Below, piece by piece: positions 10,407 through 37,795 of a stretch of DNA of 63,725 bases. Source of the stretch: Stylophora pistillata (Eukaryota); the NCBI RefSeq assembly GCF_002571385.2, contig NW_019218288.1:97362-161086 (forward strand), given 5' to 3'. The notes beneath the pieces are model-generated. The model saw only the letters and a program-made list of their open reading frames with translations. It made no database searches and had not been told where the DNA came from. Numbering within the stretch: position 1 is the first letter of the stretch; every line of letters begins with the position of its first letter. The position numbers were made by a program, and so were the translations under genes.

Positions 10407-13400
10407 ATGCCAAGACAAGATAGAAAAGGCGACGGTTTAGTAACTCTGAATCTAACAGCCAGCCCTGAGAATGGGTACGATGAAGCGGAAGAGGGCAAGC
10501 TCGATTTCGACAGAGACGCAGCAAGCGAGGAGGTGGATGTGGTAAAACCGCAGACTTGGGGAAACAAAGCTGAATATATTCTCGCTACTATCGGGTTCGC
10601 GGTTGGATTTGGGAATTTATGGAGATTTCCGTATTTATGTCAGAAAAATGGAGGAGGTAGGGAGAGATTTAATGGATTTCAAATTGAGTCATGATACCGC
10701 GTCTGCGGTCATGAAACTACTAATTTACTATGTAAATTGCGGCGAAGGAGGGAAAATCGTCACTCACTGATAGTTCCCTTCCGTTAGCTCAATGATTCCT
10801 GCTTGGAATTAAAACGCAATAGTTCGTATTATTTGGTTTTACTTCCTTTACCATTTCTGCTTTAGGTTCTTGGGCCATGTTTTTTTTTTTTTTTTATTGA
10901 CGGATTAAATAATTTCCTTTTAGGAAAGCACATGTAAAAGAACAATAACGTTCACAAAATTCGAGAGCCCCTGACGCCCTGTTGAGATAAGAAATCGCAT
11001 TAGAAAAACTAGCCTTATTAAAATAAAATCAGCGCACTTTTAGAGCTGTTATAGCCTTAGATATCACGTTAGTAATGTTTTGTTCCATCTTAAGTTTAGC
11101 TGTACCCGTCGCTCCATGGCTCGATTTTTTAAGCCAGTCATCTTTTGAAAAAAAAAGCAATTGATTGAAAATTGGCAAACTGACCGCTAGTAAGTTATTC
11201 TCCATTGTTTCCCTGGAAATACTTGGTGGAATTGCAAATACATCAGATCGGAAGCAACGTCGAACAACAGCTGACAAAAAGAGCAACTTTACGGCTAGAT
11301 AAAATGACAAAGCTCACGCGCCTTTCAAAATTTAATCACATGCACATGTCGAGGAGTCCCGCATTGCTCTTTTTAATTACTAGATTTACTCTCTTGCTCT
11401 TCGAACAAAAAAAGAAAAACCGATGAAAATCGCACCTCCTTTGAAGCAGTGTAACCGAAAAAAAGAACTCGGTATCTCAGATTATCCTAGCGAAATTGTG
11501 ATGTCCGTGCAATGAACCTTACTAACACGGCTGGAACGATGAATGCAAATTTTACGCTCGTCAGACGGTAACTCCTGGTAACAATAGGTCGACAGGACAT
11601 TTACACAACAGGTTATATCTGTAAAAACAAATACCATAGAAAGAACACGGTTTGCCTTCTTTTCAATATGTCACTCCACTAGCCTTTTGCTGTATAGCTT
11701 TAAAATTTCGTTTTAAAAGAATTCTTGTGATACTAAGACGCTGCTAGATGGAGTTAGCTGGGATCACCTAATAGCCGTTCAAAAAGTTAACCGTAAAAAT
11801 TTTTCCTATTTTCGACGTGTCATTTGTAAAATGTCAAAATGCAATGTTCCAAATTTAAGAAGGTATAATATTCTTTAACACTCCCAAAAAAGTGAAACTC
11901 GAAACTCTTTTAACGTATGCAATTTGCCTCAAAGTATTTTTCCTTTTGAACAGTTTCAATCCAAAATAATTTTTATGCGATTGAAAAGTGTATACGAAGA
12001 AGAAGTGATTTTGAAAAGCATTTAACAATAAAAAATTGCGCTAAAACTTTTCTTAAAATCATTTTAAGATTAAAAAATTAAAAAATTTCTAAAAGTGTAT
12101 CTTTGTATCGCATGCAATCATCTTTATTCGATCCGGCGGCCTCCAGCAAATGTTTTAGCGAGTCGGAACCCTTTCACGTATAAGTTTCTCTTTTTTTCCT
12201 TTATATTGGAAAGGGTTGTGCATGCAATACACGCAAAATCGTCATCAGTTCACAGAACTGTTTCCATAATTTATGCTTTGGTTGGACCAAGCTCTTTTTC
12301 AAAACCAAAAATGGAAGTTTATTATTTCGGTTTGTGACTAAAACGATACTAAATCTCTACATGTGGGCAGAGAGGCATGGCTAGTTTGACCATTCATGTC
12401 TTCTCTAATCAAAGTTATTTTTCATTTCTTCCATAAAAGGTGCGTTTCTAATTCCATACTTCATCAGCCTGATCCTCCTGGGGATTCCTCTCTTCTTCCT
12501 CGAGCTTGCCATCGGCCAAGGCCTCCGTCAGGGTCCCATCGGTGTGTGGAAAGCTATTCATCCCTACCTGGGTGGTGTGGGGCTGGCTTCGGTGGTCGTA
12601 TGCGTCCTGATCTCTATGTACTACAACATGATCATTGCATGGTGTTTCTATTATCTTTTTGTGTCGTTTCAAGACCCCCTCCCGTACTCTACTTGCCCCA
12701 GCGGCGTGAACTGTACGGTGAATGAGGAATGCAAACTGGCCGGTCGAACACAGTATTTCTGGTACACTAAAGCCCTTGGTACAACAACCTCCATCGAGGA
12801 TATGGGTGATTTCCAGTGGCATCTTTGCCTTGCACTAGTGTTGGCATGGATTGTTCTGTTTTTGTTTGTCAGCCGTGGTGTCCAGTCTGCCGGAAAGGTA
12901 AAACATTAATAAGCCTTGCCAGTTAGAGTGGTTCTCTCAGGAAGAAAAGCAAGGCCGTTGTCTGAAGACGACTCCGTTTTGTGTTTTGTTTTTGTAAACC
13001 TTTGAGAGTTATCTAAGTTCTCATTTGTTTATAGGCGTTGTATGTCACTGCCACCTTACCATATATCGTGCTGGCCATCTTCTTTGGTAGAGCTGTTACA
13101 TTGAAGGGGTCATTAGATGGAATCATACACATGTTCAAACCTCAGGTAATTATCGGAAAACCGTGTTCATTTCTACTGTTAAACCTTTGCAAAAGGACAC
13201 TCACTACAGGCAGACTCCTCAGATTGGAGCATTTTTCACGAGTCAGAAGTGATCGACAAAGCACACAGTCTATAGGGTATTGTGCGAGTCAGTGGGGGAG
13301 AGGGTCAAAATTCCATCCCGATGGTGGATACAGTTTAGAAATAACATTTCCTGGTGGCCGGGAACCATTCTGATTGATTTCTCAATTCTCTTCATAAATG

Positions 13401-17308: not shown

Positions 17309-20300
17309 CTTACATCTTTTAATCTCAAAGAGATTCCAGTTTTAATGTCATAAACATAGAATAAAACGGTATCAGTTCTCAGGTCTCTGAGAGTGGCGCG
17401 GCGCAAACTGAATGCTAAATGCTCTATTTCTGTGATGTTTCGCTTTCAAATGATGCTACAGAGACAACTCCTTTGCAGAAGCCTCAACCGTTTTGAAGAG
17501 CAAAAGCGATGCAGAGAAGAGAGCTAAGAATGAAGAATCAAATGAACTCAGTAGAATTTTCAGCTATCACAACATTCATTTCTTTGCCAAACACACATGT
17601 CATCACTCAAGTCGTCTGAATGTCTAACCACATTACCCACATATACTTTGTTTGGCGAACCAGGAGTTTCAAAATTCCTAGAAATATATGACCCATACCG
17701 GGCGCTTTTCATTAAAACGGTGGGAGAGTCACATTTAAGAATTAACAGACTCTTTCCTGCCAAATTTATACTTTCCTCGTATCGTACCCGACTTACACAC
17801 TGTTAATTCACATCAAAGGAATTACGATTGGTGAAACCAAACAATTTATCCTAACAAATCCTAAGGTAGAATGTCTTTTACTAAACGTAAAATTTACTCT
17901 GTGATTTCTACGTTGTGCAAAGTATAAATACCGTATCATCATGTGTTAAAATTAAAAGGTACGGGTAACACTTTTCTGTAAAAGATATATTTAGAAATTA
18001 AATTCTAGGAACGTGTGGCGGATATGACGCCGACATCATACTGATATCTTGATATGTAAAGCGACAGAAACTAAAATACCCCTTGTGAACACATTTCACT
18101 TTTCTGCCTATTATTGGTTTCGAACTAAGGAAAATAAATCTGATGGGTCAAACCGACCAAGAAGGGCGGTTACTTAGCACTTTCAGTATCGAACGATTTT
18201 CAGAGCAATTCATCAATTGGTTCCTCATCATAAGTCAGAAGTTTCGAGGTACGATCTTTCAAGTTTGATCCGCACGAGTTTTCAAATACGATAGCTTTGG
18301 GCTGGTACACAAGATCTAGATCACCATCTTATATCAATAAAGACATCAAACCATCAACACAGGGAATAGCAGGGTTACATCTCGGAGACGGGGCCAGACG
18401 GGTATTTCGGTTTCATATGGCAAAGTGTCTAAAAAAAAAAAACAACCGGCCTAACGACAGGTAAAAGAAGGAACGGTTCAATTAGTTTACTTTGTCATCC
18501 TATTTCAACTTTCACGTACTGTTACGTTCCCACCTTGAATCTCTTTGTTGCGAAATAAACCCTAACAGAGCAGAAGGTAACTCTCTCTCGTGTTTTGGCG
18601 GGAGAGTAAAGCGGGAAACGTGGCAACCACAATGGAAATGAAAAATGTCGTAATTTGCATATACTACAGCCGCCTTTAAGTAATACACAGCTGCGTAGAA
18701 ATCATTTCGATTCGACTTCAGTCCCATCGATAAGAATCAGTTTTTAATCGATATGGATCAGTTTTTAATCAACTAGATTCCTTCCCCTTCCACTATGACC
18801 CGGCAAAATTCAAACTTCGATCACTGATCGCTCGACAGATTTCAAGAGCGAAAAATGCACTTTTTTTAGTTTTCATGAATAAACAACCCATGAAATTTGC
18901 TTTAGGAAATGAACCGCGACGAGTAGTTAACGAAATGAAGAAATTGAGCATTGTGAGCAGCACTGTGGTGAAATCTGAACCAGGGTTAGAGATGATCAAA
19001 TGTGCCTTTTAAATGGAAATAAAGCCCCTGAAATAGATCACTACAACAAATTAGTGATGCATGAATGAAAAAGCGGCGGCAGTTACTGTAACACGCTCAT
19101 CTCTCACTGTGCAATCTTGAAAATGCCAATGTCAAGTCGTTGAGTATTGATTAAAAGAAGTCTCTTTCAATTATATATATATCTATATATTTCCCGGCGA
19201 GATTAGCACGTGCCTTCAAAACGATATTGAAGTTTCTCTTTCTCTTTGTAAACGAAACTTGCTAAACACCATGTTTACGGAAGGCTCTGTGGGTGAATTT
19301 TGATCAAAGCTCAGTTGAATCGTATCATGCTATTATTTCGCTCCAACAATTCATATTTTCAGAGAAATATCACGCAAAGACCAATGAAAGGAAGAAACAA
19401 GTGCGTCATACATTTCGACGCAATAGATACAGGTAAAACCAGAACGGTGAAACACCCAATACCGTTGCGTAATAGAAAGTGAAATATCGGAATGAACAAA
19501 GGCGCTGATTGGCTACCTACCTTCCCGCTTGATTTGACCTATTGTCCGTCTGTTAATGCAAATTAAAATTTCAGCTGGGTTGACTTTAGCATCGAATTAT
19601 TGGTACGTATTCCACGTGGTGTTTAGACGGTGATTATTTGCGTCCTTTGGATCTCTATTATTGGTATGTTTAGGGTGACTTTTTAGTAGATAGATCTCAT
19701 GCTTGAACTTATTAAGACAGCTCTCTGCGATTACTTGGTCAGGAAAACCGCACAGAGACCACTGTAGAGTTTTCAAAGTGATTCAAAACACACGGCGAAG
19801 CGAGGCAAAAGGTACCTTAAACACGGGAAATTTGATGATTTCAATTGACTACAGCCCTCTTCTTTCAACAAAAAGATCGTTCGCTACCTTTCAGTGACTC
19901 CCAATTCATTCACAACTTTTTTATTTTGGCGCCCTTGGTACTAGTAGAGTCGTTTTTACGCGCTTGCCGTAAACCCGAACATGTGAAAACATGTAAACAC
20001 CGTTGGCGCTTTGTCGGAGTTAAACATTAATAACTGAAAGGGAAGAAATGACTAGTCAGAATTTGATTTCTCGTCACACCGGGAAACGGCTTGAGACAAA
20101 AACAACGGGAAGTGAACAAAAAATGCCAATGGTTTTATATGCCAAGGATGCGTTCTGTTCATTCGAAGCTCCCTGAAGCCCTCGAAAACGTATCTGCTAT
20201 TTAAGATTCTTCACGTGACTTCTGTAGTGTACACTTGCACGTGGCGGAAGAACTTTTTTCTTGAATAATTCCATCATATCGTTGTGGAATTAATGGAACT

Positions 20301-20721
20301 AGAGTGATTTCATTTGACTTGAGTCATAGGTGATCTCTTGGCAATACTTATTATTCAATTTTCTGTACAGGTCTCACTAGAATTTGTAGTATTGTTATTT
20401 ACCTCACTTGAAATATGTACTTTTTACTTGAATGAAACCTAATATGATCGATCAAATCACTCAGACTTTACCATTCGGCAGTTTGTTTTGGATAACATAT
20501 AAAACTGATATTTTTTTTCAGCGTTATGGAAGGTTTCTGACCACCTTTCGAACAATTTGTACTGTTCTTAACATTTTCGAAGATACGTTTTTGTGATGGA
20601 ACAATATGAGGCAATATAAACAAAACATCGTCGTTTTAGGTGACACGGGATTGAACTGTGTCGCTATTTTACGGGTGACTTACTTAAGTATGAAAGATGT
20701 GCTTCATGATCGGTTGTATTG

Positions 20722-20937
20722 AATAGTCCATTTTACAGTTGTGTGCTTGGTTGCCAAGCCTTTGAATGGGAAGCTAGGGTTGACCATGTTATGATACAAA
20801 CCTTGCTGCCTTTCAAATGTAAATCACTTTGTTATAATGCTAAGTAGATACAGGTCTCTATCACAACAGGGTCACCTTCAGCCTCACTCTGAATCAAAGG
20901 CTTGGCAATTAAGTACACAACTGTTAAATGGCCTATT
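20722..20937. mobile_element. MITE
   Basis: ~40-bp TIRs AATAGTCCATTTTACAGTTGTGTGCTTGGTTGCCAAGCCTTTG / CAAAGGCTTGGCAATTAAGTACACAACTGTTAAATGGCCTATT. Confidence 0.78.
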
Positions 20938-23900
20938 TTCTCATAATGAAATATAAACATAGTCATTGGCATAAAAGTGAAATGCACTGTTGTGTGTATG
21001 GATCAAGACAACGTTTACCCAGTCAGTGTATGCTAAGACGGAGAAAATTTCATTTTAACTGAACAATTTCTCAAACCCGTCTAGCAGCCACTATTTTTGG
21101 GTGCGTGATTCAGACTCTTACAAAACAACCAGCTTTGCATTTAAAAAAAATTACTAGACATTTCAAAAGAAAGAAATGAATGATCGATAGTCCTTTTGAA
21201 AAGTTTTTATCTAATTTTGCATAATTATATGAGAACAAAAACAACGATAAGGAACAGTGTCTTATCTGGCTCGAAAACGAGGTTAGTCACATGAACCCTT
21301 AGCAACCAGGCCGGCCATGATTGTGGAGGTGTCTTTGGTTAAGTCACTATAGTTGTCCTGACAACATTTGCGTTTCAGTGAGGTTAAACGCTTTTTGAAA
21401 TAATAAATTGATGCTGGTTTATGTAAGGATGTCTTAAGCAGCACTTTGCTACTTGGGGCTCTCCTCTTATCATGTGCAATAAATTGCAGGTAAATAGTCA
21501 TGAACCGCCATAGTTGGGAGGTAAACCCGTTGGTTCTTGGCGAAACATTTGAATTCGGCACGAGTGAAAACAGAAAATTTAAAGAATTACAGTGGAGGAT
21601 TTGAAATAAGAACCTGATTTCAAATCCACTCGGTCATACTGCTCCCACATCTTCAAAAAAATTGCAAATGCAGAGTTCCTCCGTTTGCCTGCCCTTAAAC
21701 CACTGATAAAGGTATCCATGGTGTTTAGAACAGGCGTGAAAATCAAATTTGTTTCGAAACAGTTCGTCTCATGTTCACGTGATACTGTTTAGCCCCAAGT
21801 GTCGTTTTAAATGACAATATAATCATAATTTGTTGCGACAAGTGTTTGGTGCTGTAAGTGGAAAGTTTAGAGTTAAATTTCAAGTCACGGTATGTTTTCG
21901 GATTAGCACGCGATTTTGGTGGACCTGCTAACAAAAACTATTGTGCGAAACAAAATAAACACAATATAATTTGACTACTGTTTACTCGCGCAAAGTTGGT
22001 GGTTCAACAGTCTTTTATTTTTCGATCGCTTGATTTAGACGACGCAGAACTATAGATATCTGTAATATAAACAAACCATTCAAAATTCGCACATGATGTG
22101 CATGGACGTTGGGCCATGTGATTGGCAGTGATCTGTTTTAACTGGTAACGTACGCATACACAACAAGTCCAGCATAGAACTTCAAAGAATAATGGCGCAT
22201 TGCTTTCAAGACATCCAGCTGAGGTGTATTCAAAATTTGTCATCTAATTTCCCATATTTATGCATAACAAAAACGATACGACAACAAAAATTAAGTAAAT
22301 GGTGTTGCCTTGTCTGGAGGTGGTATGTGCAGAAAAATTCTCTCTCTTCTTCCTGCAAGGTAGCCTTGCAAAACGGAGAATTCTCCATTTTCCTCAAAAG
22401 AGGGTTAGTATTTATAGCAATGTTACTTGAGTACAGAAATTTCAAACAAAAATATGTTACCTTCAGCAGACACGCTTGATTTATGAACTTCGTGAACTAG
22501 CTTGCACTCCACGCATGCGATATATTTGTAACATCAAACACTGATTTCAACAAACGAGAAAAATATCGTTGAGACCCGAAATTACAGTACCACATCTCCA
22601 ATGAGTTAAAAAATATTTTGAGAACCTCTTGACCGCGAATGTGACTCGGGAACACCATCAAATGAAATCAAGTGAAACTATCACTAGACTTTCAATTAAG
22701 GTAAGTGTGACTTTTTTTTGTTGCACCGTGATCCGTGAAGTAGGTTTTCATTCGCAATCTCACGGTTCACTTCACTGAAAATGCGCCAAGAAGATAAGAA
22801 TCTACTTGACCTACTGAACCGTTTTGCAAAGACATAAAACTGAGTTACGTGTGTTTAAACAACAATGGAAGGCCTCGAGGCCAAAGAACCCGTGGGAAAC
22901 CAGAATTTGTTCTTGTTTTCTTTTCGAAACCTTTGGTATACTGGCGCTAAAATTTTATTCCAAGCGACGCACAAATATATCCTCATTAAGAGTAAATGGA
23001 AATCGATAAGTATAAAAGTAGCTCCTAACATAGGACGTTTCTGTATTGTTAGTTGTCGAATCACGTGGCAAACATGGTGTTTTAATTTACTTGTTATGGA
23101 ATTGTTTCGCTTTCTTGCGAAAGATGAATGAAAACGTGTTTTGAATCGCCACCAACATAGTATGTGGATTCATAAACGAACTGTAACTTGCCAGTTCTGA
23201 AGCTTTTTAATGATGTGGTGGCGAATGACGAAATATCAACTTTTGATCCTGTATAATCAAACACTGAATATTGAAATTCCAACTTGAGCTTGTCTAAGTT
23301 TAGCGTGTGCATCTTTATGTTTATGTTTCCTGTGCAGCGAACCAACTGATACTTAACAGGATACTTAGCGGGAAAAATAAAGGAATTTGTTTTCGTAAAG
23401 TTTCCAACAAGATTCCAGACGCTCAGTGTGAAATAATAAAAGAAAACAACATTTAAGTTCAGTAACGATTATAACAACTATTGTCTTGAAAATTCCGTGT
23501 ATGTCTTGGAAGGAACCCAGACATCTCAGAGGCGTGACAGGTACAATAGCTATTATTGGTTAATATGCCACATCCTGTAAATGCCGGGAATAGACCGGTA
23601 CACAGGTCACGGGTTGAAATTGTAATAAAAAGAGCTCTCTTAATCTTTGCCAAGTTAGTCAATTGCCCGGCTTTCGTCCCTGTGCCAAAGTGTCTGTCGA
23701 TCAACCTTAGAAGGTAAGAACTATGTCATAAATATCATTCTTAAATCTTTCCAATTATTCATGGCTTCCACAGTTTGGCCCATTCATCAGTACATTTTTA
23801 AGTGGATCAAAACATTAGGTCAGCACACTTTTCTAGTTCGCAAACTCTTTGAAATGGCCATATTTTGAAACCGAATTTTCTCATAAAACATCAAAAAGAA

Positions 23901-25480
23901 TAACCGAATCATAATTTTGATTTTCAGGAACCTGTATTAAATCAAATTAATTAATTGACTGCACATTTCGATGGCACACAAGGAATTGGAAGACTGATTA
24001 ATAACATCTCTGTTTTGCATTGCGAAATCTATGCGTGAGAATAATTGTGTACTACAGAAGAGTACGCTATCAAGCGCCCTGTATTAGGAGCATAAACAAA
24101 CAGAAATCATTTTACCTTATAATCATAGAATTAATTTAAAATCGAATCATGTACTGTTGCCGTTATAATGCTTTTGCCGGCCACGACCACATTTTTGGAT
24201 TGAAAGTCCGGCCTTCACAGATTTCAAGCTCGGTTGAACAAAACTGAGTTAAATTTGACAGCACCACTTGTCGTCAGTTTGTCGGCCGGCAACCACAATT
24301 TGGGAGTTTCGCTAAGTAAGTCAGAGAAATCTTTTTTCCAATTTACGAAAAACTTCCAACTTTCCACGAAATTGTGAGCGAGTTGTCGCGCCTCGCGTGA
24401 TTTTCGCGAGCTCCATGAGTCCCAGAAGACATGATCAACCTTTGGCGGGAAATTTCTCGGCCCCCTCTTGAAGCGTCACATGGTATTTGTTTCGCTTCAG
24501 TGGTGAAAGTTGTACCACATGCGAAGTTTATAATACCTGAGCATCATCGAATTTACCTCCAAGTCAGGACCTAAAACGCTGTGTGGTAACATTCATAGGT
24601 CAGCTTAGCGCCTTGAAAACACTGGCTTCACCTTGAAGGAAAGAGCAAAAAGTTAGAGCCTCAACACACTTGGCTCACCTGAATAGAGTTGTCACATTGT
24701 TTTGACAGCTTTGTTGAACGTAGGCGCCATATTTGAACTCTTGACGTCACAAATAGACGAATTTAGTCGCCTGTAGGGGTTCTGTGCATGTGTGTGTGTG
24801 TGTGTGTGCTTTTTTTTTTTCAGCAACCACTAAGATAGGCGTTTGGTTTTTCAAGTAGGCGAAGGGACCTCAGAAAAGTTCAATTTCGACTACAAATTTT
24901 CCAAAAAGAGAGTTAATCTTTTCGACTCGCATGATCACTCTTTTTTTTTTTTTTCTAATATCGATACGGGTCAGCTCTGGCTGAGAATAGAGTAAGACAA
25001 TTTTGTTCGAGTTTTCCTTCCTTTTTTCTCAAAAATTGTCACATTCATTTAAACCTGAGGGTACTTTTTACAGTTTAACCTGTGTTAAAGGTCAAGCTAC
25101 AGCTTAAGGAAAAAAATCCAGTGATAAAAACTGTAAGTAACCACAGAATTCGAATGTTAAACATTTCATCCGACATATCATACTGTTAGCGTCTACGTTC
25201 CCAAAACGCACACTTCTGATTAAACGTGTTATAAACCTTCAAGAAACGGGCAAGTAGACTTAAAAGATAATATAACAAACGAATCTTAGCAACTTGTGAG
25301 GAAATATTCAGCCCTTAGCTAAAAGTTAAAGAGCGTAAATTCAACGCGAAGGAGAGCCATATGGTTATTACCATGCATATTAAGCAGCTTTGGTCCGCGT
25401 GAGCTGACCATCGTTTCAGTAATCACTGTTTTGTGTTGCAGAAACGTAAAGAGTGACTTCATCATTTCTAAGGATTACAA

Positions 25481-25742
25481 ATGGCCAAAGAAGAGGATCT
25501 TGAGTATTCGGACACCAAGAAGATAGCCTTCAACGTCGAGACCGAGGAAATTGAGGAGATCAATAACCCGCATCCGACCACCGACATTGAAAGTAATGGA
25601 GTAACCGTGCGTATCTACGAAGCTGATAGCGACCGTGGCAAGTGGGGCAATCAAATCGAGTTCGTTCTCGCAGCCATCGGATTTGCGGTTGGTCTTGGAA
25701 ATGTATGGCGTTTTCCCTACCTTTGCCAGAAAAATGGTGGAG
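25481..25742 (+). CDS. Alternative (duplicated) first coding exon 1a of SLC6 paralog C: N-terminus plus TM1
   Basis: MAKEEDLE...[34 protein letters not shown] ending at a phase-1 donor G|GTAAT, with an upstream acceptor ttgcag at 25441. No exon-2 homolog appears before 31427. Confidence 0.85.
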
Positions 25743-27346
25743 GTAATATGGCCTTTTCTTTACTACTTGTTTTGTCGGCATCTAAGTAAAATCTTTCCAC
25801 TAAGATGTTTACTGGTAGTAAAATGAATGCACAAGAAAAAGTTTTGAAGAAAAAAATCTGACCATTTCCCTAGCTACGAAATTATCTATGTATTTCACAT
25901 GTGAATTCTGTTTCTACGGAGAGTACTTTTTCAGGTGTATTCATCGTGTTAAAACGTGATATTTTTAATTCATCAATGGAACCTTCCGCATGATAAATTG
26001 ACTAATTTTACGACCAGGACGGAACAAAAGTTTTCGCTTTATTTTTGTTCTGAAATTCCTGTTCGAATTGAATTTTTAAGCTTTATCACTTTTGTAGGAC
26101 TGATTATGCTTCACGACGTCTCTTTTCTGCTCTTATCCATTTTCTCCTTGTATTCTATTTACAAGTAAACAGAGCTTGTCCGCCATTCATTCGCATTTGA
26201 CCACAATGACGAAGTGAAAAATAGCGATTCCAAAATACGCCATCATTCGACTAAGTGTATGTATTTCTTGAATATTTATTCTGCTATATTTCAACAAAAA
26301 CTTAAATTCGAAAACATTTTATGAAAATATGAGAAAATAGAAAAGAAACTGTGAATTAAATACTACGCCACAAATTCACCTAAATCGATTTGCATGACCG
26401 CGAACGCAGTTAGTCATAAAATATAACTATCCTCACGCATAATAAAATAAAGTGGATTTACGGAGAAAAAAATCGCCGTTTATTCCTCACTCTTCTTTCT
26501 ACCTCAAGGCTCTTTTTCAAGCCCATCACTACCACAAGAAAATCGAAGTGACGTTTTTCGCCTGTGCTATTGTAAGAACAAAATGTTCAGTTTTCCTCGT
26601 CGATCTCGTTTTCCGGCTAACTTCTGTTAGCTTGTTATCAGTAGTTATTTCACCATAAATTCTTATCAATCACAAAAATCTTTTTAATTCTGTATCGTTA
26701 ACTCAAATCAAAAGGGCGAGTATTTCGAATAACAGAGGGCAATTTATTTTTCCTTAATCAATGACTTTTACGCCAACGTTCAATATCACGTGTATTTGTT
26801 TACGTTTTTTTTCTTCCCGCCATTAATTTCGAGCGCTATGTATCATGTGACGGGGAACTTCTTTGGGCGACGAGTTGCAGCAGTAATCGGCATACTTTGT
26901 TTTTCACTGTTTTACCTCAGCGGCCACTTTTTCAGTTCACTTTTAGAGAACATAAAAGGAAGAAAAATATCTATTTTTAAATCGAAAGCCTCTTTTCATC
27001 ATTTTTTTTTTCTTAGCCATCAGGAATGATGTGATTCAGTACATCTGGAAAAAAATTATCAACCAATTTTTACCACTTTTAAAAAGAGTAATAAAACTAT
27101 CTCCCCTTCTCCCAAAAAGAGACAGAAATGGTATTGTCATTTCGGAAAGCCTAGGACCAAACTGGTGTTGATTGTGTTGCTAGCTTAATTCAGCCATATC
27201 TAAACCGTGATCTTCCTAAGTTCAAAGAGAAATCAGAGGAAAATCTTGAAAATTGGGCGGACTTATTCTCAAGACTTCTTTTCGCCACAATTTTGGGATT
27301 CCTAGGACTATAGTCCATAAGTTGTGGGATCAAGTTATTGACATAA

Positions 27347-27898
27347 GGGAGCATTCATTATTTATGGGAGGGGGTGGGCTGGCAAGATTTTCAGTGAGAC
27401 TAAATAACAAAATATCCTGACTCCGCTCTATGAGAATTAAAAATGTCATGACCCCTCTAGTGGTAATTGCAAAAATAGCGAGCCCCCCTCCCCCCCAAGA
27501 CTATCAAAGCAGCTAGGTTAAAAGAAGTGAAAAATATCTTTCAGATATTTAGTGTTGTTGCAGAAACACCTTGAAAATACAGTTCTAGAGTTTAAAATCT
27601 AAAGTTGATGTAAAATGGGTGACATGATATAAGAGATATCCTATGTTACTGTGTCCAGCTTGGTATGGTACTGTCTGCAAAGTTAGCTATTGTTCCTTAT
27701 ATCTTCAATGGTGGGTAGTAGAAATGTTCTACAAACTTAAACCTACATTTGTAGATGATATGTAATAAAAAAAGCTTTTGACCCCCCTACATTATTCCCA
27801 AATTTGTCTAATGACCCCCCATTTTAGTTCCTGAATTTATCATGACCCCCCCATTATTCTTGCCAGCCCTCCCCCCGCCATAAATAATGTAGGCTCCC
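27347..27898. mobile_element. Tourist/PIF-Harbinger-like MITE
   Basis: TIRs GGGAGCATTCATTATTTATGG / CCATAAATAATGTAGGCTCCC flanked by a TAA target-site duplication (27344-27346, 27899-27901). Confidence 0.8.
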
Positions 27899-28893
27899 TA
27901 AAGGTATATTGAATTTCGTATACCTTACAACCTTGTTTGCATGTGGTTTAAATTTTCAGTGTGGTATACAAACGGCTATCTCTTGTCTACTTGAATACAA
28001 ACGTAAGTTGGGGCAAACGGAAACTGCTCTCATTCACATATGCAAAGGGAACTAACGAGTCAACTTGAATACGGAAGTTGTGTTTCCCCCGCTGTTATGA
28101 AATCGGACAGTAAAAATTATTGTTACAAGAGTGCGTATAGAGTCTTTTACAAAATTAAAAGCAAACGCGTACACAATAAAGGCCGAAAGAATATCTTCAA
28201 ACTTACCTCGGTTCTTGTTTTATTCTCGTCTTGTTCTAACTGGAAGGTAGTAGGCAGGAGATTCGAAGTAAATGTTCTAGTTACGGAGCGGAGACGAATT
28301 TCCACGATCGAATTTGGGCTGGAATATTCAATTTGTTTGGAGAGCGTTTTTTAAATTATCCAGAACTCTGCAGACTACCTCCCAACAGGCTTGAACCGAT
28401 GTCACCGTAAGTCTACAACACAACACTGGTTAACAAACTGTTTCAAAACGAAAAGAAAGCCTGTAAAGTTGCACCTCTTTTGTCTAGAAATGTTTAACCA
28501 ACTGACCATTGTGCGCGAAGAAACAAATAAAATGTAAATATCAAATAAATTAGCTGGGAAAATCGCGGCATAAAGATTGGCACCTGTCAATTATGAGCTT
28601 GTAATGTACGAGTGGTTTCCTTTTAGTTCATTCAGACTTTAGAATTTTACGAGCAGTGCACTTGTATTTTTCACTGCAAAGAAGTCGGATCATCATTATA
28701 TGGTGTGATTTAGTGCTTTTCTACGAGAAAAAAGTTGCTCAAGGGAACGAAAGATTCCAGAAGTCATGAATGAAATTTGATCTTTCCACGTGCATCACAT
28801 CCTTCACTGTTTGTTTTCATATGCCCCTCAGAGGTGAAGCAAGTGTGCAGTTGATAATCGTCCGTTCGCTGAGCTAGAGGTTCCTTTCCAGTC

Positions 28894-31800
28894 ATGTCTC
28901 GTGCAAATTTAAAGGATGGCGTCGTAAATTTAACTGTCACGGAAACTCGGGGGAAAAATTTAGAAGTCCCGGAACAAAAATCAGCCAAAAACAGCGATGT
29001 TGTACCAGAGGTAGCTGTGGCGGACGAAAGAGGAGGATGGGGAAACAAGATAGAATTCATTTTGGCCACTGTTGGCTTCGCGGTCGGTCTTGGAAACATA
29101 TGGAGATTTCCTTATCTGTGCCAGAAAAGCGGAGGAGGTATTTTATCTGACATCAGTTCTTGGCTGAGGCCTTTTTGTCTGGGGCAAACCTCAAAATGTA
29201 ATCGGTTGAAAGGTTACTAAAACCATGGAGGTCCACCCCCGATTATTATTAATCACAGGTTAAAATTGGCGGACCGGCAATCTTATTTGTATTGTTGGTA
29301 ATTGAATAACGCCTGTTTCAAAATTTTTCGGGTGGAAGATTTTATTTTACCTCCTTTGGTCTGAAGAAATTTACGCATGAAAATTATATTCAAAAGAAAT
29401 TTGAGATCAGACCGGCCCATTGACGCTAAATTAATAGCATGAGTACTTGAAAATCGTGTTTGAGATATCTTATTAGCCGTGTTTTACTGTTTTACTTGGT
29501 GAACTTCATTGTTTAGTTTTAGCTATTTAGAAGCAGAAGGCGAAACGGATCAAAGTAATTTCTTTTGAAATTAGACCTGCGTGCGACACGTATTCGCTCG
29601 TTTAGATGCAAACGATTTTGATGTTTGTTTAGCTCAAGTACGTCTGCCTGATTTTATCAACGATAAATATTTCCTCCACAAAATACGAAGAAACGCTTTA
29701 TCCAAAACAAACTGCGTGTCTCGCTTATCTCGGATAATTTTGTTTTTGTCGATTGCTTGTGTTCATATTCACGCCAAAATTCCCGCGGCAACTACTTCAT
29801 TGATTTTGTGTTGTTTACCTTTTAAAACTAGAGCTTCTCACAAAATTTTCGGACGGTTGATATAGTAAAATACTTGCATACTAAACAAATGGTTTGGTCT
29901 GCTGTTGATCGGATTTTTGAGGGCTTAGAATGGTGCTCTTGAGGCAGTCACGCTCTTGGACGTGTGTGACTGGACTATGTTAAGGCTCTTTTGTGACAAG
30001 CCGCAACCCGCTACCCGCTTTTGTTTTGCCCAATATGTTTCGCGACAATATTTCACTATGGTTTTGAAAATAAATTTATTTGTGAAGTGACTGTTATTAT
30101 TGTCAAATATTGTACTCATGGTCGCTTTGTTTGGTCACGTTAATCTTTGGTTATAACAGGATATTTATCAACAGATAAGCATAAATTAAATTTGGACCAG
30201 AATCTCTTGGCACTGAATTTTGATTAGGCAGTTCAAAGGCTAATTGCTGTTTCCTGACGGCCAGGTATTCACAAGAGGTCAAACTTGGACCACTGCTTCG
30301 AATAATCTTTTAAAGTGATTTTTCCTTGGTTGGATCAACACTGTTCACAGTAATCAACATTTATATGAACCTTGAGGCTAACATGAAGATGGTTAACAAG
30401 GTTTTGCACAGTGAAACTGAACTTTGTATCTTGTGGGAGTTATGCTCTGAAAATTGTTTCCTCAGAAGATCAATATTTACTTTGTTTACATTGTTTTATG
30501 GCAAAACAGATAAGAGACAGTCATATTTGGTTGTGCTAAAAACTCGCAATAACTCTTTTGTGATTAACCTAAGGACTTTTCGCACCAAAATATTTATAGT
30601 CACAAAAATATCAATCAGTGGATTTTTCTATCTTTTTAGTTTGTCAATGCTATATGTGCAGAAAGGTGCCCTGAAGATGGGCCTACTACTTTTAACTGTG
30701 TTTCTTAAAGGAATTTTTTATTCACGGCTTTGTCTCTTTACTGGCAGTGTACATGTCTTTACTAATAAATAACATTCCAGAATTTACTTCAGTCTGTCAA
30801 TTTGAAAGAGAGATTTGCCAGAGGACCTTAGCAGAATGATCACAGTCATCAATAGTTCATATTCCACACAATGTTTGGTTATAAAGGTTCAGTAACTGAC
30901 GGTCATCAAATATGATTCGCTGAAATTTAAATTTAACAAAATTAAAAATGATCTTGATGTTGTATAACTGTTCAAAACATTCAAGTAATGTGATAATTGA
31001 GCTTTTGTGAGTTTTTTGACAATGAGCCCAAAAGAACAATTGTTTTCTCATACTGTGTAATTTTGCATTGAAAATCAAAGATGAGACTTTGATGTGTTCA
31101 GAACAGGGGTAGTTCTATAAAACTTATTGCAGCAAGAGAGTCAAAGACATGTAAATTGTGGCAAGAAACACAAAAGGACTCCCCCATTCCTTTCTAAGAA
31201 CCCATAACATGTGGTTTGGTTGCTCAAACATGAATAAAATACAACAAAGAAGGTGCCCTGTTGCTACTCAAGTCCCAAACCTGCTTCTGAATACAATTAG
31301 ACTGTGTTTTCTAATGCATTACATTTTTGTCTTTGTTAGCTCATACAATAATTACCAGTAAATGATTATGAGTCACTACTTATACAAAACATGTTTTAGT
31401 CTAACAGAACTATTTTTCATTTACAGGTGCATTTTTGATTCCATACTTCCTGAGTCTTTTCCTCATTGGTATCCCACTGTTCTTCCTTGAGCTCGCCATT
31501 GGCCAGAGTCTGCGACAGGGATCTGTTGGAGTATGGAATGCCATTCACCCATACCTTGGAGGTGTTGGTTATGCCTGTGTTGTTGTCTGTCTGCTTGTGG
31601 GAATGTACTACAACATGGTCATTTCCTGGTGCTTCTATTATCTGTTTGCATCATTTCAAGACCCTCTGCCATATGCTGAGTGCCCCCGACTGGATAATGG
31701 TACATTGCATGAAGAGTGTGAGCAGGCTGGTCATACACAGTTCTATTGGTACAGAAAAGCCCTTGATGTAACTCCCTCAATTGAGGAGAGTGGAGGTCTT

Positions 31801-34800
31801 GTTTGGCATCTTGTCCTTGTGTTGTTAGTAGCTTGGGCGGTTGTGTTCCTCTGCATGATGAGAGGGGTTCAGTCAGCTGGAAAGGTAACTCATTAACGGG
31901 TTACTGTATGCTCATGTAAGACTATTGACGGGGACAATTTATTTCCCAAAATCTACTAAAACCTTGAAACCCTACAGTTCTAACTCTAAAGGTGCAAACC
32001 CTTGGAAATATGAAATTTGAAGATAATGAGTTAACATTGTCTCACACTGGCTCACTTTAGACTGCCTCGTCCAAATTTCTTTCAACTAACTGACTTAAAC
32101 ATAATCCAAAAAAATTGTGGAAAAATTCTGATGAGGATTCTAAGGGCATTGTTCTATTTATCACTTTTCAGGCAGTGTACTTTACTGCTACTTTCCCTTA
32201 CATTGTCTTGACCATCTTCTTTGGTCGTGGTGTCAGCTTGGAAGGTGCTGGTGCTGGAATTACCCACATGCTGAAACCCCAGGTTTGTGTCTAGTCATTC
32301 TACAACATGTTTGTCAGGGACCTTTTAATAATACCATGTGTGGGTTTTCAAATATCCAATCTAATTTAATGCCACATGAGAGAAAGAAGGTTTACGGGTA
32401 CTTGTATCATCACCAACTATGCCTACCCTGGGCTCGCGCTGGGATGCCACAAAGGGCTTAAGAAATAAGTAAAAAGGATGAAAGATTTCATGAAAGGATT
32501 AGTAAAGGGGGGAAAACATTGTCTTCCTCTGTCAGAGTAAATATTATATAAATAGGAAAGTTTGTAAATGAAAATACAAGGTCAGCAGTAGTAGGAGGTT
32601 TTTGGCTGGAATAGCATCATTGGAATCTCTATGTTTTCATTTCATGGTAGCAGCAAAGTGGATTACTCGTCCATTTCTTCATCGTCTCTGACTTGTTTTA
32701 TTGCAGTTTTCAAAGCTTGCAAATCCTCAGGTGTGGCTGGAAGCTGCAACACAAATTTTCTTTTCTCTAAGTGTGGCCTTTGGAGGACTTATTGCCATGT
32801 CCAGTTACAATCCAGTGCACAACAACTGCCACCGTGATGCCATTATGGTCTCATTGATCAATTGTGGAACATCAGTGTTTGCCAGTATTGTAATTTTCAG
32901 CATCCTCGGTTTCAAGGTTTGTCTTAAGATTCCCTTCTTTCAAGTTCCGTACACTTCTATACTTATATCTTTCAACAGTTTTAAGGTGTGAATTACAACA
33001 TGATGAAGATTTGGAAAGGACCTGCTTCATATTTGTAACTTTTGTGAGATCACAAATTTTATTCCAGAATGGATAACTGTTGTATGTTGCACTCACATTT
33101 TCCCCATTCTTTCCAATTTTTCTCCCTTTTCTCTTTCATCTGCATTATCTGCTAGTAACAGAAATCTAAATTCTAGCCTTTAAGTTGATGTTAAACCAGG
33201 TCTGGGGCGGATTCAGGATTTAGTCAAGGGGGGCTTGGAGGATTGTCTGAGGGCATATACTTCCATGGGAGATTGTGAAAATTAGGTCTTTGAAAACGTG
33301 ATTTCCAGCATTTTTGAGGGAAATTTTAAGGGGTTTGACCAAACCACCCAAACCATCCCTGGATCTGCTTCAGCAGGTGATTTGCTCAGTTTTTTTACCC
33401 AACCTTTTAATTCAACTTTAATTGTATTCAAATCTGGATCTGTAATACTTTGTATTTTATATGCAATCCTTTTCATATCCTTACTAGAACTAGAGTATAT
33501 TGTCTAACTTCCCTTCAGGGAGCTTTGTTATAGCATCACTTTAAGTTAAAAAGTATGATATTTGGTACATTTTAGGCCACTCGTTCTTTCCATGAGTGTC
33601 AAGATTTTTATGGACGTATAAATGACACCAATGGAACTGATTTGGTTGCTGAGAAGTGCAAGGACTTGGAACATTGGCTGTCCCAGGTAAGGTGGAGGTT
33701 ATTTTATTATCATAACCAGAAGAATTCTTACAAGCTCATTGGATAAGAGCTATTTTTAACACGGGTACAGTCAGTGAAAATGATATCGATGATGTCAATC
33801 CAGAACAGCTCAAAATAATTATGTTACTGCTTAGGTCATTTGGATAACACTTCATTGCTTAAAGATTTTAATCTGAACATGTTAGAAGCAGGTCTGGTGG
33901 GTACATGTTTTGTTTTCAGCGGGGTGTGTTTAAAACACGAAATGGCGAAATGACGAAATGGTACCAAATATACGAGGCAAAGTTATAAGATATTACCGCT
34001 CCAATAGAAGTTGTAATGTTGCCCGATTTATTCTGTTTGGGAACGAGCATCTAATTTTTCAGTTTACCTTGTATCTATTTTATATAAACATCCCACGTCA
34101 CTCCGTTTCCCTGCAAAGTACACATTTGCCAAATATCTCGTGTAAACTTCATCACGAAGTGAGTTCTGTTTTCATCATCCATTCCATGTGATTGCTGGAG
34201 CTCTAAGCATAACGTTATAGCCGCTGCTCAATGGTAAATACGAGATAAACAAACCGTTTTCTTCCCAAAACGCCGCCATTTTGATGAGGAATATCCTAAG
34301 CGTCAAATCTGCACCCTGTTAACAGAGAGAGACTGGAGTCGAGTTTACCGAAAGGTCCATGAAGACAAATTTGTGATTGTAGATGTTTCTTTTATTTGTG
34401 GCGATTAATCCACAGAGTAAATTTGGCAACAGATGGAGATTTCAGTGGAATGGTAATACCTTAGAACTTTGGCCCTTGTCTTAAGTGCCACTTCGCCATT
34501 TTGCCATTTCGTCGTTTCACCGTTTCATGTTTTAAACACGCCCTTTTCAGCACTATTGCTTTCACTTCGTTGATTCCCAAGCAGTAGTAGTATACCATTT
34601 ATGTACAAGCAACAGACTTGACTATTATACAAAACCTCAAAATAAATACATAAAAAAACTGGATCTTGGTCAATGTTCTTATCTCAAATTTCTGGCACTA
34701 ATACTCAAAATACGCATACCGTATTTTGCTTATCATTTCCTTGCTGTTAGTTTACCAGGGCCCAGTTGTTCAAAGACTGATTAGCACTTACCCAGGGTTA

Positions 34801-36905
34801 AATTTTAATCAAGGTTTCTATATTTCTTTGTTCAGAAGCTGTTTTAAGATAATTTTCTCAATTCTTCTTAGAGCATTCAGTCATCAAATAGTAAACAAAT
34901 GGAATTAATCTGAATTTTATTTTAAAACTTTCAGATTTGCAATTAAATTTCACCGTAACCCTCGGTTATCTTAACCTACATTTAAACAACCCAGCCTCTA
35001 ACCTCTTACCACATACCACACTGTTCACACTGTGACTCTCGCTTGGTTTAGTTGGTGACTTTTCCTCTAATTTTGTAGTCTGCATCTGGCCCTGGTCTGA
35101 CATTCATTGCTTTCACTGAGGCCATTGTTAAAATGCCTGCCTCACCTCTCTGGTCTGTGCTGTTCTTTACCATGTTACTGACCCTTGGACTTGGCAGCAT
35201 GTTTGGAACTCTGGAAGGAGTCATCACTCCCTTTTATGACATGAAAATTGTGCCATGGAGGAAAGAGATCATGACTGGTATGTGTCTTGGTTGTTATAGT
35301 AACTGTTGTGTGTTTAGTGCTACCAAAATGACGTCCTAAATGTCCAGATTATGCAGTACAGTATCTCATCAGTGATTAGGAATCTGCTTTGTCATATCAT
35401 GTTCATCAGAGTGTGGGTATCATGAGGTAGAGAATGTTGTGAGATAATTAGAAAGCTTTTACGGCTCTCCTAGTTTGGTCACTGTGGGGATAACTGGTAA
35501 TGTTAACATAACATAACGAATAGGATTTATTTGTAGGTATCATCTGTGTCTTCTGTTACATCGTTGGGTTACTGTTTACCCAGCATTCTGGACAATACTG
35601 GCTCCAGATGTTCGATAATTACTGTGCTACTCTGCCTCTGCTGTTCATTGGCCTGTTTGAACTTGTTGGTGTGAGTTACATCTATACAATTGAAAGGTGA
35701 GAGTACACCCCAATATAGGAAGAGCCATGATTGGAGGTGTTTGTTTTGTATGTGTGGCTTTTCTGCAAAGTGGCTCTGACATCTTGATCTTTTCTCCACA
35801 ACAGGTTTGAAGATGACATACAGTACATGATTGGCTTCAGGCCACATCCATATTGGAGGATCTGCTGGCGCTATATATCACCTTTCCTCATTTCTGTTAT
35901 TCTCATTGCTAGCATCATTAATCTAGCAATCACGCCCATGACATATACAGCATGGGATCCTAAACTTGTGAGTGTTCAGGCCAATTTTTTCTTTGTCAAT
36001 CTAAACTATAAAAAAATTCTTAAGCATGATTGGTTATTGGCAGCATGATTTTAACACTAGTAGGATAGTCAATGCATCATCCTTGTAACTGGACATTGTA
36101 ATAGAACAGTTTTTCTGCTCTGTAGTCATTCAAATTTGTCGATTAGTGGTACATGGAATCCACTACATCCTATTCTTGAATTGAAAGAAGCACAAATCTT
36201 TGATCACAGACCAACTACATGGTCAAAAGGTCACAATAGCAGCTAGAAGTTGTAGAAAAACTACAAAGAAGCACAGATAGAAAAAAATTATGAAAATACA
36301 GAAGAGCCAAAAGATTTTATTCCAAGGGGGAAGAAGGATACTTAAGGAAGGGTAAACAGTTAGCTTTAAGAAAGAAATTATTACAACTACAGAAAGAGGA
36401 CAAGACATCGGTGAGGTTTGCATTACAAACTTAATCGTGTGCTTAAACTGTCCACACAACAAAATGGACATAGTTACAGTTATCAACTTGCAAAAATATT
36501 AGTATTTGTTTGCATGGAACTTGTAACATTTCACAAGCAGACAAAGATTAGGTGATAAATGTGATTTAAAGGGGTTACAGGCATAATTATTTTTACATGA
36601 TATATGTAGGTGAAAACCAAATTAACCTTTTTTCCTCTGTTTGGTGTTTTCAGTTCAAGACAGCAGACTTGAGCTATCCTGGATGGGGCTATGCTGTCAT
36701 TGTCCTCCTTATAGCAACATCAGTGCTCTTCATTCCTATTTTTGCATTGCTGCGCTATTTTGGGATCTTGAAATACAAGAAGCCAATGCCTCAACAGAGT
36801 GCGGGTGACCGTATTCCCCCAGGATCAATCACTCCATCACTGTCTCGTGTCCCCCTGCCACCCATGGAAGTACCACTGTCTGGAACTCGAGATGATGAGG
36901 ATTAA
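28894..36905 (+). CDS. SLC6 neutral amino acid transporter, paralog C (exon 1b form ~635 aa; exon 1a form ~641 aa)
   Basis: Exons 28894-29137, 31427-31884, 32172-32282, 32707-32916, 33576-33686, 35079-35277, 35537-35696, 35805-35967, 36654-36905; 1908 nt in frame. Motifs [42 protein letters not shown] and [12 protein letters not shown]. Confidence 0.94.
33208..33370. mobile_element. Degenerate MITE-like repeat
   Basis: Imperfect inverted ends GGGGCGGATTCAGG / CCTGGATCTGCTTC. Confidence 0.45.
33921..34543. mobile_element. MITE with ~8-bp TSD (hAT-like)
   Basis: TIRs GGGTGTGTTTAAAACACGAAATGGCGAAATGACGAAATGG / CCATTTCGTCGTTTCACCGTTTCATGTTTTAAACACGCCC; direct flanks TTTTCAGC at 33913-33920 and 34544-34551. 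Confidence 0.82.
34758..34997. mobile_element. Degenerate MITE-like repeat
   Basis: Imperfect inverted ends GGCCCAGTTGTTCAAA / TTTAAACAACCCAGCC. Confidence 0.5.
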
Positions 36906-37458: not shown

Positions 37459-37795
37459 NNNNNNNNNNNNNNNNNNNNNNNNNNNNNNNNNNNNNNNNNN
37501 NNNNNNNNNNNNNNNNNNNNNNNNNNNNNNNNNNNNNNNNNNNNNNNNNNNNNNNNNNNNNNNNNNNNNNNNNNNNNNNNNNNNNNNNNNNNNNNNNNNN
37601 NNNNNNNNNNNNNNNNNNNNNNNNNNNNNNNNNNNNNNNNNNNNNNNNNNNNNNNNNNNNNNNNNNNNNNNNNNNNNNNNNNNNNNNNNNNNNNNNNNNN
37701 NNNNNNNNNNNNNNNNNNNNNNNNNNNNNNNNNNNNNNNNNNNNNNNNNNNNNNNNNNNNNNNNNNNNNNNNNNNNNNNNNNNNNNNNNNNNNNN
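37459..37795. other. Assembly gap (N run)
   Basis: 337 Ns; a second small gap lies at 49035-49055. Confidence 0.99.

What the first reader, a model, noticed from the sequence alone, without database searches (positions are those of the whole stretch)
25481..31884. One SLC6 gene with two intact, duplicated N-terminus+TM1 exons (variable first exon, shared body)
Exon 1a (25481-25742) and exon 1b (28894-29137) each encode a different cytoplasmic N-terminus plus a complete TM1 ([20 protein letters not shown] vs [20 protein letters not shown]). Both end in the same phase-1 donor, yet only one set of exons 2-9 follows (31427-36905). TM1 contributes to the substrate and Na sites, so swapping it would give isoforms differing in the transport core as well as the regulatory tail, like a UGT1A/protocadherin-style cassette. 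Neither exon is decayed despite heavy divergence upstream of the conserved W-G-N motif, which suggests both are under selection. Exon 1a has an acceptor at 25441 and a candidate upstream donor at 25133. Exon 1b has TTCCTTTCCAG|TC ATG, so a 1a+1b splice would be in frame and give two TM1s; exclusivity is therefore not enforced by frame.
Basis: partly seen in the sequence, partly recalled or inferred. Interest (0 to 1): 0.8.

Follow-up and report, generated by a model that had tools for sequence, protein, structure and literature searches.

The report
Coral amino-acid transporter, two alternative first exons
A coral SLC6 amino-acid transporter gene has two intact copies of its first coding exon, each spliced to the same gene body and both kept in other coral genomes, giving two proteins that differ mainly in the cytoplasmic N-terminal tail: a tidy but fairly ordinary case of alternative first exons.

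Summary
The window (a scleractinian coral contig) holds three tandem SLC6 genes. The third has two exon-1 copies, 1a at 25481-25742 and 1b at 28894-29137. Each has an ATG, an open frame, Pfam SNF positions 1-37 and a phase-1 GT donor. A single body follows, starting at exon 2 (31427, SNF position 38). No decayed body exons lie between the copies.

RNA contigs show GT..AG joints 25742>31427 (1a, one polyA run, 28-letter anchor) and 29137>31427 (1b, two runs, 85-letter anchor in one).

Four other coral genomes carry the same 1a-1b-exon 2 order with both exons intact, although synonymous sites are saturated. TM1 omega is about 0-0.03 in both exons. The tail omega is about 0.05 for 1a and 0.2-0.4 for 1b, and all 1b indels are multiples of three.

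So 1a is not an orphan remnant. It is the better conserved exon, and a more distant coral has only a 1a-type exon.

The claim that the isoforms differ in the transport core is not supported. The GFAVGLGN motif is identical, and only two conservative differences (Q/K, I/V) are fixed between the types.

Unexplained: in three runs the 1a donor also joins an exon I could not find in the assembly.

Verdict: real, conserved alternative first exons; modest novelty.

The parts
25481..25742 (+). Exon 1a, coding part: ATG, 54-aa acidic N-terminal tail, R-x-x-W gate motif, TM1 ([14 protein letters not shown]), phase-1 donor GAG|GT
   Evidence: (SNF 1-37). RNA contigs of X3, X13, X14 and X1 end exactly at 25742. 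Orthologs are 68-97% identical in more than 15 ORF calls.
28894..29137 (+). Exon 1b, coding part: ATG, 46-aa tail of another type (like gene B and pseudogene Z), R-x-x-W, TM1 ([14 protein letters not shown]), phase-1 donor GAG|GT
   Evidence: (SNF 1-37). Joint 29137>31427 in X3 and X13. Intact orthologs in L013, L015, L017 and L018.
28801..28893 (+). 5' untranslated part of exon 1b when it is used as a first exon; it lies colinear with the genome across the AG at 28891-28892
   Evidence: X3 record 12 lies on 28801-29135 without a break and then joins exon 2. X3 has no depth in 28560-28759. The start of transcription itself is not shown.
28682..28893 (+). Alternative acceptor used by the 1a donor in run X1; the reading frame from 1a meets a stop after about 10 codons
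   Evidence: Joint 25740>28680 (cut +2) in X1, 181-letter anchor. Frame check. X1 is only guessed to be RNA.
31427..31884 (+). Exon 2, the shared acceptor exon (begins G|GT GCA TTT = GAFLIPY; SNF 38-205)
   Evidence: Both joints land at 31427. Best solved relatives are SIT1/SLC6A20 (3.6e-56) and B0AT1/SLC6A19 (2.7e-49).
32172..36905 (+). Remaining body exons of the same gene. Likely 32172-32282 and 32707-916; further coding pieces lie near 35079, 35524, 35788 and 36654-36902, with the stop at 36903-36905. One loop exon between 32916 and 35079 was not mapped, and the boundaries are approximate.
   Evidence: tblastn and Pfam coverage of SNF 203-492. Splice-site listing. P0132 shows the exon 2>exon 3 join in a relative.
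26784..26835 (.). Single-copy conserved non-coding element in the 1a-1b intron, about 1.05 kb behind the 1a donor in three genomes; candidate regulatory element
   Evidence: No Rfam match. Function not tested.

Best explanation
Gene C of a tandem array of SLC6 amino-acid transporter genes (SIT1/B0AT1-like branch) in a coral has two alternative first coding exons. Each carries its own start codon, a cytoplasmic N-terminal tail, the R-x-x-W gate motif and all of TM1. Each ends in the same phase-1 donor, and each is spliced to the one acceptor of exon 2 at 31427. TM1 is duplicated simply because, in this gene family, tail and TM1 share one exon. The products are two full-length transporters with almost the same TM1 and unrelated tails. 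Exon 1a has an acidic, strongly conserved tail. Exon 1b has a fast-evolving tail related to that of neighbouring gene B. The likely purpose (inferred) is isoform-specific regulation, sorting or expression through separate promoters, as with the N-terminal isoforms of GlyT1, rather than a change of substrate site. The arrangement is old: it predates the split of at least five coral lineages whose synonymous sites are saturated. Shown here: the anatomy, both splice joints, and conservation with purifying selection. Inferred: separate promoters, functional difference between the tails, and the order of origin (1a ancestral, 1b added later).
For: Anatomy.

RNA: a GT..AG joint 29137>31427 in X3 and in X13, with an 85-letter anchor in X13. 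A GT..AG joint 25742>31427 in X3, where its contig depth (89.6) equals that of the exon 2 contig (87.9) while the 1b joint has 8.6. The last 28 letters of 1a differ at 6-7 places from 1b, A and B, so a mis-laid paralog is unlikely.

Conservation: the order 1a-1b-exon 2 is present in L013, L015, L017 and L018, with ATG, open frame and phase-1 GT in every copy. dS is saturated (about 1-2 or undefined). dN/dS is about 0.01-0.03 for both TM1 parts, about 0.05 for the 1a tail and 0.2-0.4 for the 1b tail. The 1b lengths are 232, 235, 244, 244 and 265 nt, all 1 modulo 3. DNA outside the exons is unalignable.

More than 15 further ORF calls of 1a in other assemblies all diverge right after NGGG, which is the donor. 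A more distant coral (L016) has a single 1a-type exon in front of a C-like body.
Against: The 1a>exon 2 joint was seen in one of four runs, with a 28-letter anchor, and the tool marks it 'between: not known'. In X13 and X14 the 1a contig runs on only into an unplaced partner. All runs were Logan contigs, which show presence but not level or absence. No transcription start data exist for either exon, so 'first exon with its own promoter' is inferred; 1a may have a non-coding exon upstream. The 1b tail evolves fast, and in this genome 1b has two extra TM1-region changes (V>I, N>S). Three protein word searches found no spliced exon 1-exon 2 product of this gene.
Confidence: 0.75

Rival explanations
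1. Exon 1a is the gene's real first exon. Exon 1b is a later, dispensable duplicate of a B/Z-type exon 1 that landed in intron 1. It is transcribed and spliced at a low level without a distinct role.
For: There is no 1b in the more distant L016. The 1b tail is only 56-65% identical between genomes where 1a is 81-93% and exon 2 is 82-90%. Tail omega is 0.2-0.4. Contig depth is lower in X3. The 1b tail resembles those of gene B and pseudogene Z.
Against: The 1b TM1 part is invariant in four genomes at saturated dS. ATG, frame and donor are kept in 5 of 5 genomes, and every indel is a multiple of three. In X13 the only exon 2 joint found comes from 1b.
Confidence: 0.1
2. Exon 1a is the leftover of a lost fourth paralog. 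It is still transcribed, but its transcripts are unproductive: joined to an unrelated exon, or to 28682 with a premature stop.
For: The 1a donor joins an unplaced, non-SLC6 partner in X3, X13 and X14. It joins 28682 in X1, giving a stop after about 10 codons. The array does lose genes: paralog Z upstream is a pseudogene.
Against: 1a is under the strongest constraint of all the parts tested (tail omega about 0.05, TM1 0.01-0.03) across saturated dS and in more than 15 assemblies. The 1a>31427 joint in X3 has the depth of exon 2 itself. No body remnants are present. In L016 the 1a-type exon is the only exon 1 of a C-like gene.
Confidence: 0.08
3. Assembly artefact: a gene body between 1a and 1b is missing or collapsed, so there are really two genes.
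For: The partner of the 1a donor is absent from the whole assembly.
Against: Four independent assemblies of other corals have the same 2.1-4.1 kb gap between 1a and 1b with no SLC6 exon in it. There is no N run between 25742 and 31427. The unplaced partner does not read as the GAFLIPY start of an SLC6 exon 2. RNA contigs lie colinear on parts of the intron.
Confidence: 0.02

Closest known systems
GlyT1 (SLC6A9) N-terminal isoforms a/b/c, made from alternative promoters and first exons (my own knowledge; the name 'Isoform GlyT-1B' appears)
   Same: It is an SLC6 gene with several first exons and one body, and its isoforms differ in the cytoplasmic N-terminal tail.
   Different: In GlyT1 the variable exons encode only the tip of the tail, and TM1 lies in common exons. 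Here each variable exon is a duplicate that also carries the gate motif and the whole of TM1. The gene belongs to the amino-acid (SIT1/B0AT1-like) branch and is found in corals.
UGT1A and clustered protocadherin variable-first-exon loci (my own knowledge)
   Same: Paralogous first exons, each with its own start codon, are joined to shared downstream exons. The first exon encodes a functional domain, not only untranslated sequence.
   Different: There are only two variable exons, not 9-50. The duplicated functional part (TM1) is kept nearly identical instead of being diversified. Promoter choice has not been shown.
SIT1/XTRP3 (SLC6A20) and B0AT1 (SLC6A19) amino-acid transporters
   Same: They are the best solved relatives of exon 2 (E 3.6e-56 and 2.7e-49, against about 1e-30 for neurotransmitter transporters). 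Named relatives are SLC6A19 and 'SLC6 15/16/17/18/20-like'.
   Different: Substrate, ion coupling and any need for an ACE2/collectrin-type partner are unknown for the coral protein. I know of no TM1-carrying alternative first exon in the mammalian genes.

Membership tests
SLC6 / Pfam SNF (PF00209) | Significant match to the SNF profile over the whole core | tested here: met
   Exons 1a and 1b match SNF 1-37. The body pieces cover 38-205, 203-242, 240-312, 324-393, 388-444 and 442-492, all above the 27-bit cut-off.
SLC6 / Pfam SNF (PF00209) | TM1 signature with the unwound G-x-A-V-G-L-G-N stretch and the R-x-x-W gate motif in front of it (residue roles recalled from LeuT, my own knowledge) | tested here: met
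   Both exons read R-G-(K/G)-W-G-N...GFAVGLGN(V/I)WRFPYLCQK.
SLC6 amino-acid transporter branch (SLC6A15-20; SIT1/B0AT1) | Closer in sequence to SIT1/B0AT1 than to the neurotransmitter, osmolyte or creatine transporters | tested here: met
   Exon 2 scores 193 bits to SIT1 and 170 bits to B0AT1, with the next best (TauT) at 109 bits. Exon 1 alone does not discriminate.
SLC6 amino-acid transporter branch (SLC6A15-20; SIT1/B0AT1) | Na+-coupled neutral amino-acid or imino-acid transport | not testable with these tools
   This needs expression and uptake assays.
Alternative (variable) first-exon gene architecture | Two or more first coding exons, each with its own ATG and donors in the same phase | tested here: met
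Alternative (variable) first-exon gene architecture | Each variable exon is spliced in RNA to the same downstream acceptor | tested here: met
   29137>31427 in X3 and X13; 25742>31427 in X3 only, with a 28-letter anchor.
Alternative (variable) first-exon gene architecture | A separate promoter or transcription start for each variable exon | tested here: inconclusive
   The 1b contig starts at 28801 and is colinear with the genome, with no X3 depth just upstream. 1a contigs run 97-166 letters past the left edge that was laid. There are no 5'-end data.
Alternative (variable) first-exon gene architecture | Mutual exclusion of the variable exons in productive mRNA | tested here: inconclusive
   No in-frame 1a>28892 joint was seen. 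One 1a>28682 joint in X1 leads to a premature stop. Contigs cannot show absence.

The most novel reading that the evidence does not exclude
Exon 1a is a shared 5' module of two transcription units. About half of its transcripts go to the SLC6 body. The rest go to an exon that is absent from the assembly and is itself shared with another upstream exon, which would give a conserved 'tail + TM1 only' protein or a chimeric product. Alternatively, the two fixed TM1 differences (Q/K, I/V next to the Na2-site glycine) together with the tails give the isoforms different kinetics or membrane destinations, for example the symbiosome versus the apical membrane.
Probability: 0.12. Interest if true: 0.6.

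Novelty: new member of a known kind. Interest (0 to 1): 0.33.

Why it matters
Corals take up and exchange amino acids with sea water and with their algal symbionts, and the SLC6 amino-acid transporters are expanded in tandem arrays. A transporter with two tails on one core, kept for a very long time, suggests that one transport activity is deployed under two regulatory or sorting regimes. It also gives isoform-specific 5' tags that can be read in existing bulk and single-cell RNA data. For annotation, gene models at this locus should carry two isoforms rather than an orphan exon or a fused double-TM1 model. It does not change how SLC6 transport or alternative first exons are understood.

Tried and rejected
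(1) I looked for decayed body exons of a lost paralog with tblastn (word size 2, E<=5) in 17400-25400, 25743-28893, 29138-31426 and the L016 intron. Only chance-level hits came back.

(2) I tried to place the unknown partner of the 1a donor. It is not in the window, the whole genome (one search gave one 1-mismatch hit at control level), any fetched locus at up to 5 errors, or JGI metagenome contigs.

(3) I looked for spliced exon 1-exon 2 proteins of this gene in the protein collection. Three word searches and a cluster listing gave almost only genomic ORF calls. The exceptions were an exon 2>3 fragment (P0132) and a spliced A/B-type protein (P0197).

(4) I tried to decide whether L016's single-exon-1 gene is the ortholog of gene C. 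Trees from exon 2 and from three exons leave C, L016 and Z unresolved. Holding C and L016 together is not rejected (p-AU 0.118). The order of origin of 1a and 1b therefore stays an inference.

(5) An Rfam scan of 24000-32000 found nothing.

(6) Literature searches found no description of TM1-carrying alternative first exons in SLC6 genes or of this coral locus.

(7) Earlier notes of this scan held nothing on this place.

The big representative-protein search was not run, because the protein is not open. N runs (37459-37795, 41323, 49035-49055) were not filled. Depth figures from contigs are used only to compare neighbouring contigs within one run, and the tool warns that they are a poor measure.
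Full report
WHAT IS THERE.

The window is G000:C503:97362-161086 of a 398-Mb coral assembly; RNA runs that hold the locus are labelled as a coral or 'coral metagenome'. On the + strand lie three tandem SLC6 genes:
- Gene A: exon 1 at 936-1143, body to about 8493.
- Gene B: exon 1 at 10407-10656, body to about 17305.
- Gene C: body 31427-36905.

A fourth copy (Z) lies upstream of the window and is a pseudogene, with stops and frameshifts in four exons.

Gene C alone has two exon-1 copies, 1a at 25481-25742 and 1b at 28894-29137. Each begins with ATG, is open, and ends GAG|GT in phase 1. Each matches Pfam SNF positions 1-37. Exon 2 begins at SNF position 38 (G|GT GCA TTT = GAFLIPY), and the remaining pieces cover SNF up to position 492 exactly once.

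Sensitive tblastn finds no remnant of a second body before, between or after the two exons. No N run lies in 25742-31427.

IS EACH EXON USED?

Exon 1a's letters are held by 20 public runs from 8 studies, 7 of them recorded as polyA RNA. I laid Logan contigs of four runs on 25560-31559, staying within the 6,000-letter limit set by the operators. The results were:
- A GT..AG joint 29137>31427 (1b to exon 2) in X3, and in X13 with an 85-letter anchor.
- A GT..AG joint 25742>31427 (1a to exon 2) in X3, on one contig with a 28-letter anchor, marked 'between: not known'.
- A GT..AG joint 25742>28682 in X1, a run only guessed to be RNA.
- In X3, X13 and X14, 26-50 letters following the 1a donor that lie nowhere on the stretch.

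A 28-letter anchor is what a k=31 graph gives at a branch. The last 28 letters of 1a differ at 6-7 places from 1b, A and B, so a mis-laid paralog is unlikely.

Within X3 the 1a>exon 2 contig has depth 89.6 and the exon 2 contig 87.9, while the 1b>exon 2 contig has 8.6. The 1a contig has 163. The bin sums of table 2 leave about 64 for the unplaced continuation (my arithmetic). The tool warns that contig depth is a poor measure, so I use it only to compare neighbouring contigs in one run.

In X13, by contrast, the only feeder of exon 2 that was found is 1b, and 1a runs on only into the unplaced partner. Both exons are thus joined to the shared acceptor, and their use seems to differ between samples. 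The 1a joint rests on one run.

X3 has no depth just upstream. This fits an internal start of transcription but does not prove one.

The 1a>28682 form meets a stop after about 10 codons.

IS EACH EXON KEPT BY SELECTION?

A word search with 1a found 18 close ORF calls, 68-97% identical over all 88 residues. A cluster listing added further variants. All are genomic calls that diverge directly after NGGG, that is, at the donor.

Fetching the contigs showed the same order, 1a then 1b then exon 2, in four other coral assemblies: L013, L015, L017 and L018. The 1a-1b gap there is 2.1-4.1 kb. In all five genomes both exons keep ATG, an open frame and a phase-1 GT.

Synonymous divergence between these genomes is saturated (dS about 1-2 or undefined). 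DNA outside the exons cannot be aligned at all, so any intact exon has been held by selection. The Nei-Gojobori estimates are:

| Part | dN/dS |
|---|---|
| 1a TM1 | about 0.01-0.03 |
| 1b TM1 | about 0-0.03 (protein invariant in four genomes) |
| 1a tail | about 0.05 |
| 1b tail | 0.2-0.4 |
| exon 2 | 0.04-0.10 |

The five 1b copies are 232, 235, 244, 244 and 265 nt long, all 1 modulo 3. Both exons are therefore coding and constrained, 1a more than 1b.

A more distant coral (L016, with a 1a-like exon 63% identical) has a single exon 1 of the 1a type, 4.4 kb in front of a C-like exon 2, and no trace of 1b. Trees from exon 2 and from three exons do not resolve C, L016 and Z. Holding C and L016 together is not rejected (p-AU 0.118).

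The 1b tail ([16 protein letters not shown]) resembles the tails of gene B and pseudogene Z rather than that of 1a. My inference, at moderate confidence, is that 1a is the ancestral first exon of gene C. 1b would then be a B/Z-type exon 1 added later, either by exon duplication or by loss of the body between two genes. The reverse history is not excluded.

WHAT DIFFERS BETWEEN THE ISOFORMS?

The TM1 parts are nearly the same. 1a reads WGNQ(I/V)EF(V/I)LA(A/T)[23 protein letters not shown]. 1b reads [34 protein letters not shown], with V>I and N>S in this genome only.

Across five genomes only two differences are fixed between the types: Q/K after WGN, and I/V just before GFAVGLGN. The R-x-x-W motif and the A-V-G-L-G-N stretch are identical in both. 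From my knowledge of LeuT and other SLC6 structures, not tested here, these provide the inner gate and the Na+ and substrate contacts.

The difference is in the tails. The 1a tail is an acidic 54-residue tail with an almost invariant NP(H/P)[16 protein letters not shown] block. The 1b tail is a variable 40-55-residue tail.

The likely mechanism is the one known for GlyT1 N-terminal isoforms: alternative promoters give one transport core two cytoplasmic tails for different regulation, sorting or expression. TM1 is duplicated only because in this family the tail and TM1 share an exon.

FAMILY.

Exon 2 is closest to SIT1/SLC6A20 (E 3.6e-56) and B0AT1/SLC6A19 (2.7e-49), far ahead of the neurotransmitter and osmolyte transporters at about 1e-30. 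Named relatives are SLC6A19 and 'SLC6 15/16/17/18/20-like'. The gene is thus a nutrient amino-acid transporter type; its substrate is unknown.

UNEXPLAINED.

The letters that follow the 1a donor in X3, X13 and X14 (beginning TGGGAACAGAAGG) could not be found. They are not in the window, the whole assembly, any fetched locus or JGI metagenome contigs.

In phase they read VGTEGVLKEG, not an SLC6 exon 2. Their length of 26-28 letters in two runs suggests a further branch, meaning the partner exon also has another upstream exon.

It may be an exon missing from the assembly, a polymorphic insertion or a chain of very short exons.

KNOWN OR NEW?

Three literature searches found no description of this locus or of TM1-carrying alternative first exons in SLC6 genes. 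Alternative first coding exons as such are well known (GlyT1, UGT1A, protocadherins). I file it as a new member of a known kind. It is useful for annotation and for isoform-level expression work in corals, but not surprising in mechanism.

LIMITS.

All RNA evidence is from assembled contigs of four runs. There are no 5'-end data and no long reads, and the species of the compared assemblies are not named.

The costly representative-protein search was not used.

Noticed in passing
window 26784-26835 (also L017:11320-11372 and L018:11326-11380): This is the only alignable non-coding DNA between these coral genomes at the locus, a block of about 50 nt at roughly 81% identity. It lies 1.04-1.06 kb behind the 1a donor in each genome, is single-copy in the genome and has no Rfam match. 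It holds CACGTG, TGTTTAC and TTCCCGCC/TTTCG(A/C)GC, which I recall as E-box, forkhead-like and E2F-like motifs. It is a candidate regulatory element, perhaps governing exon choice.
   Followed up: partly
RNA contigs of X3, X13 and X14 behind window 25742: The 1a donor is joined to 26-50 letters (TGGGAACAGAAGG...) that are absent from the window, the whole assembly and all fetched loci. The partner exon is unknown.
   Followed up: yes
L023 = G000:C503:74000-83999 (upstream of the window): A fourth tandem SLC6 paralog (Z) is a pseudogene. It has a stop in the exon-1 tail, a frameshift in exon 2, a stop in exon 3 and a frameshift in a later exon. Its tail is of the 1b/B type.
   Followed up: partly
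window 28682 (acceptor) with 25742 (donor): In run X1 exon 1a is spliced to an acceptor 212 nt upstream of the 1b start codon. This would give a transcript with a premature stop, or a two-cistron layout with the 1b reading frame downstream.
   Followed up: partly
window 29094 and 29128 region (exon 1b): In this genome only, 1b has V>I (GNIW) and N>S (QKSGGG) in the otherwise invariant TM1 part, so 1b changes slightly faster in this lineage.
   Followed up: no
window 45473-48055 (+) and 59567-63318 (+): Downstream neighbours are open frames that look like CUB-domain exons (45.4-48 kb) and leucine-rich-repeat (RNI-like) exons (59.5-63.3 kb). They were judged by eye from translations and not scanned.
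   Followed up: no
window 41420-41650 (-): A simple (GA/TC)n and (TA)n repeat tract and TE-like open frames sit around 41-42.4 kb, next to a single N at 41323.
   Followed up: no
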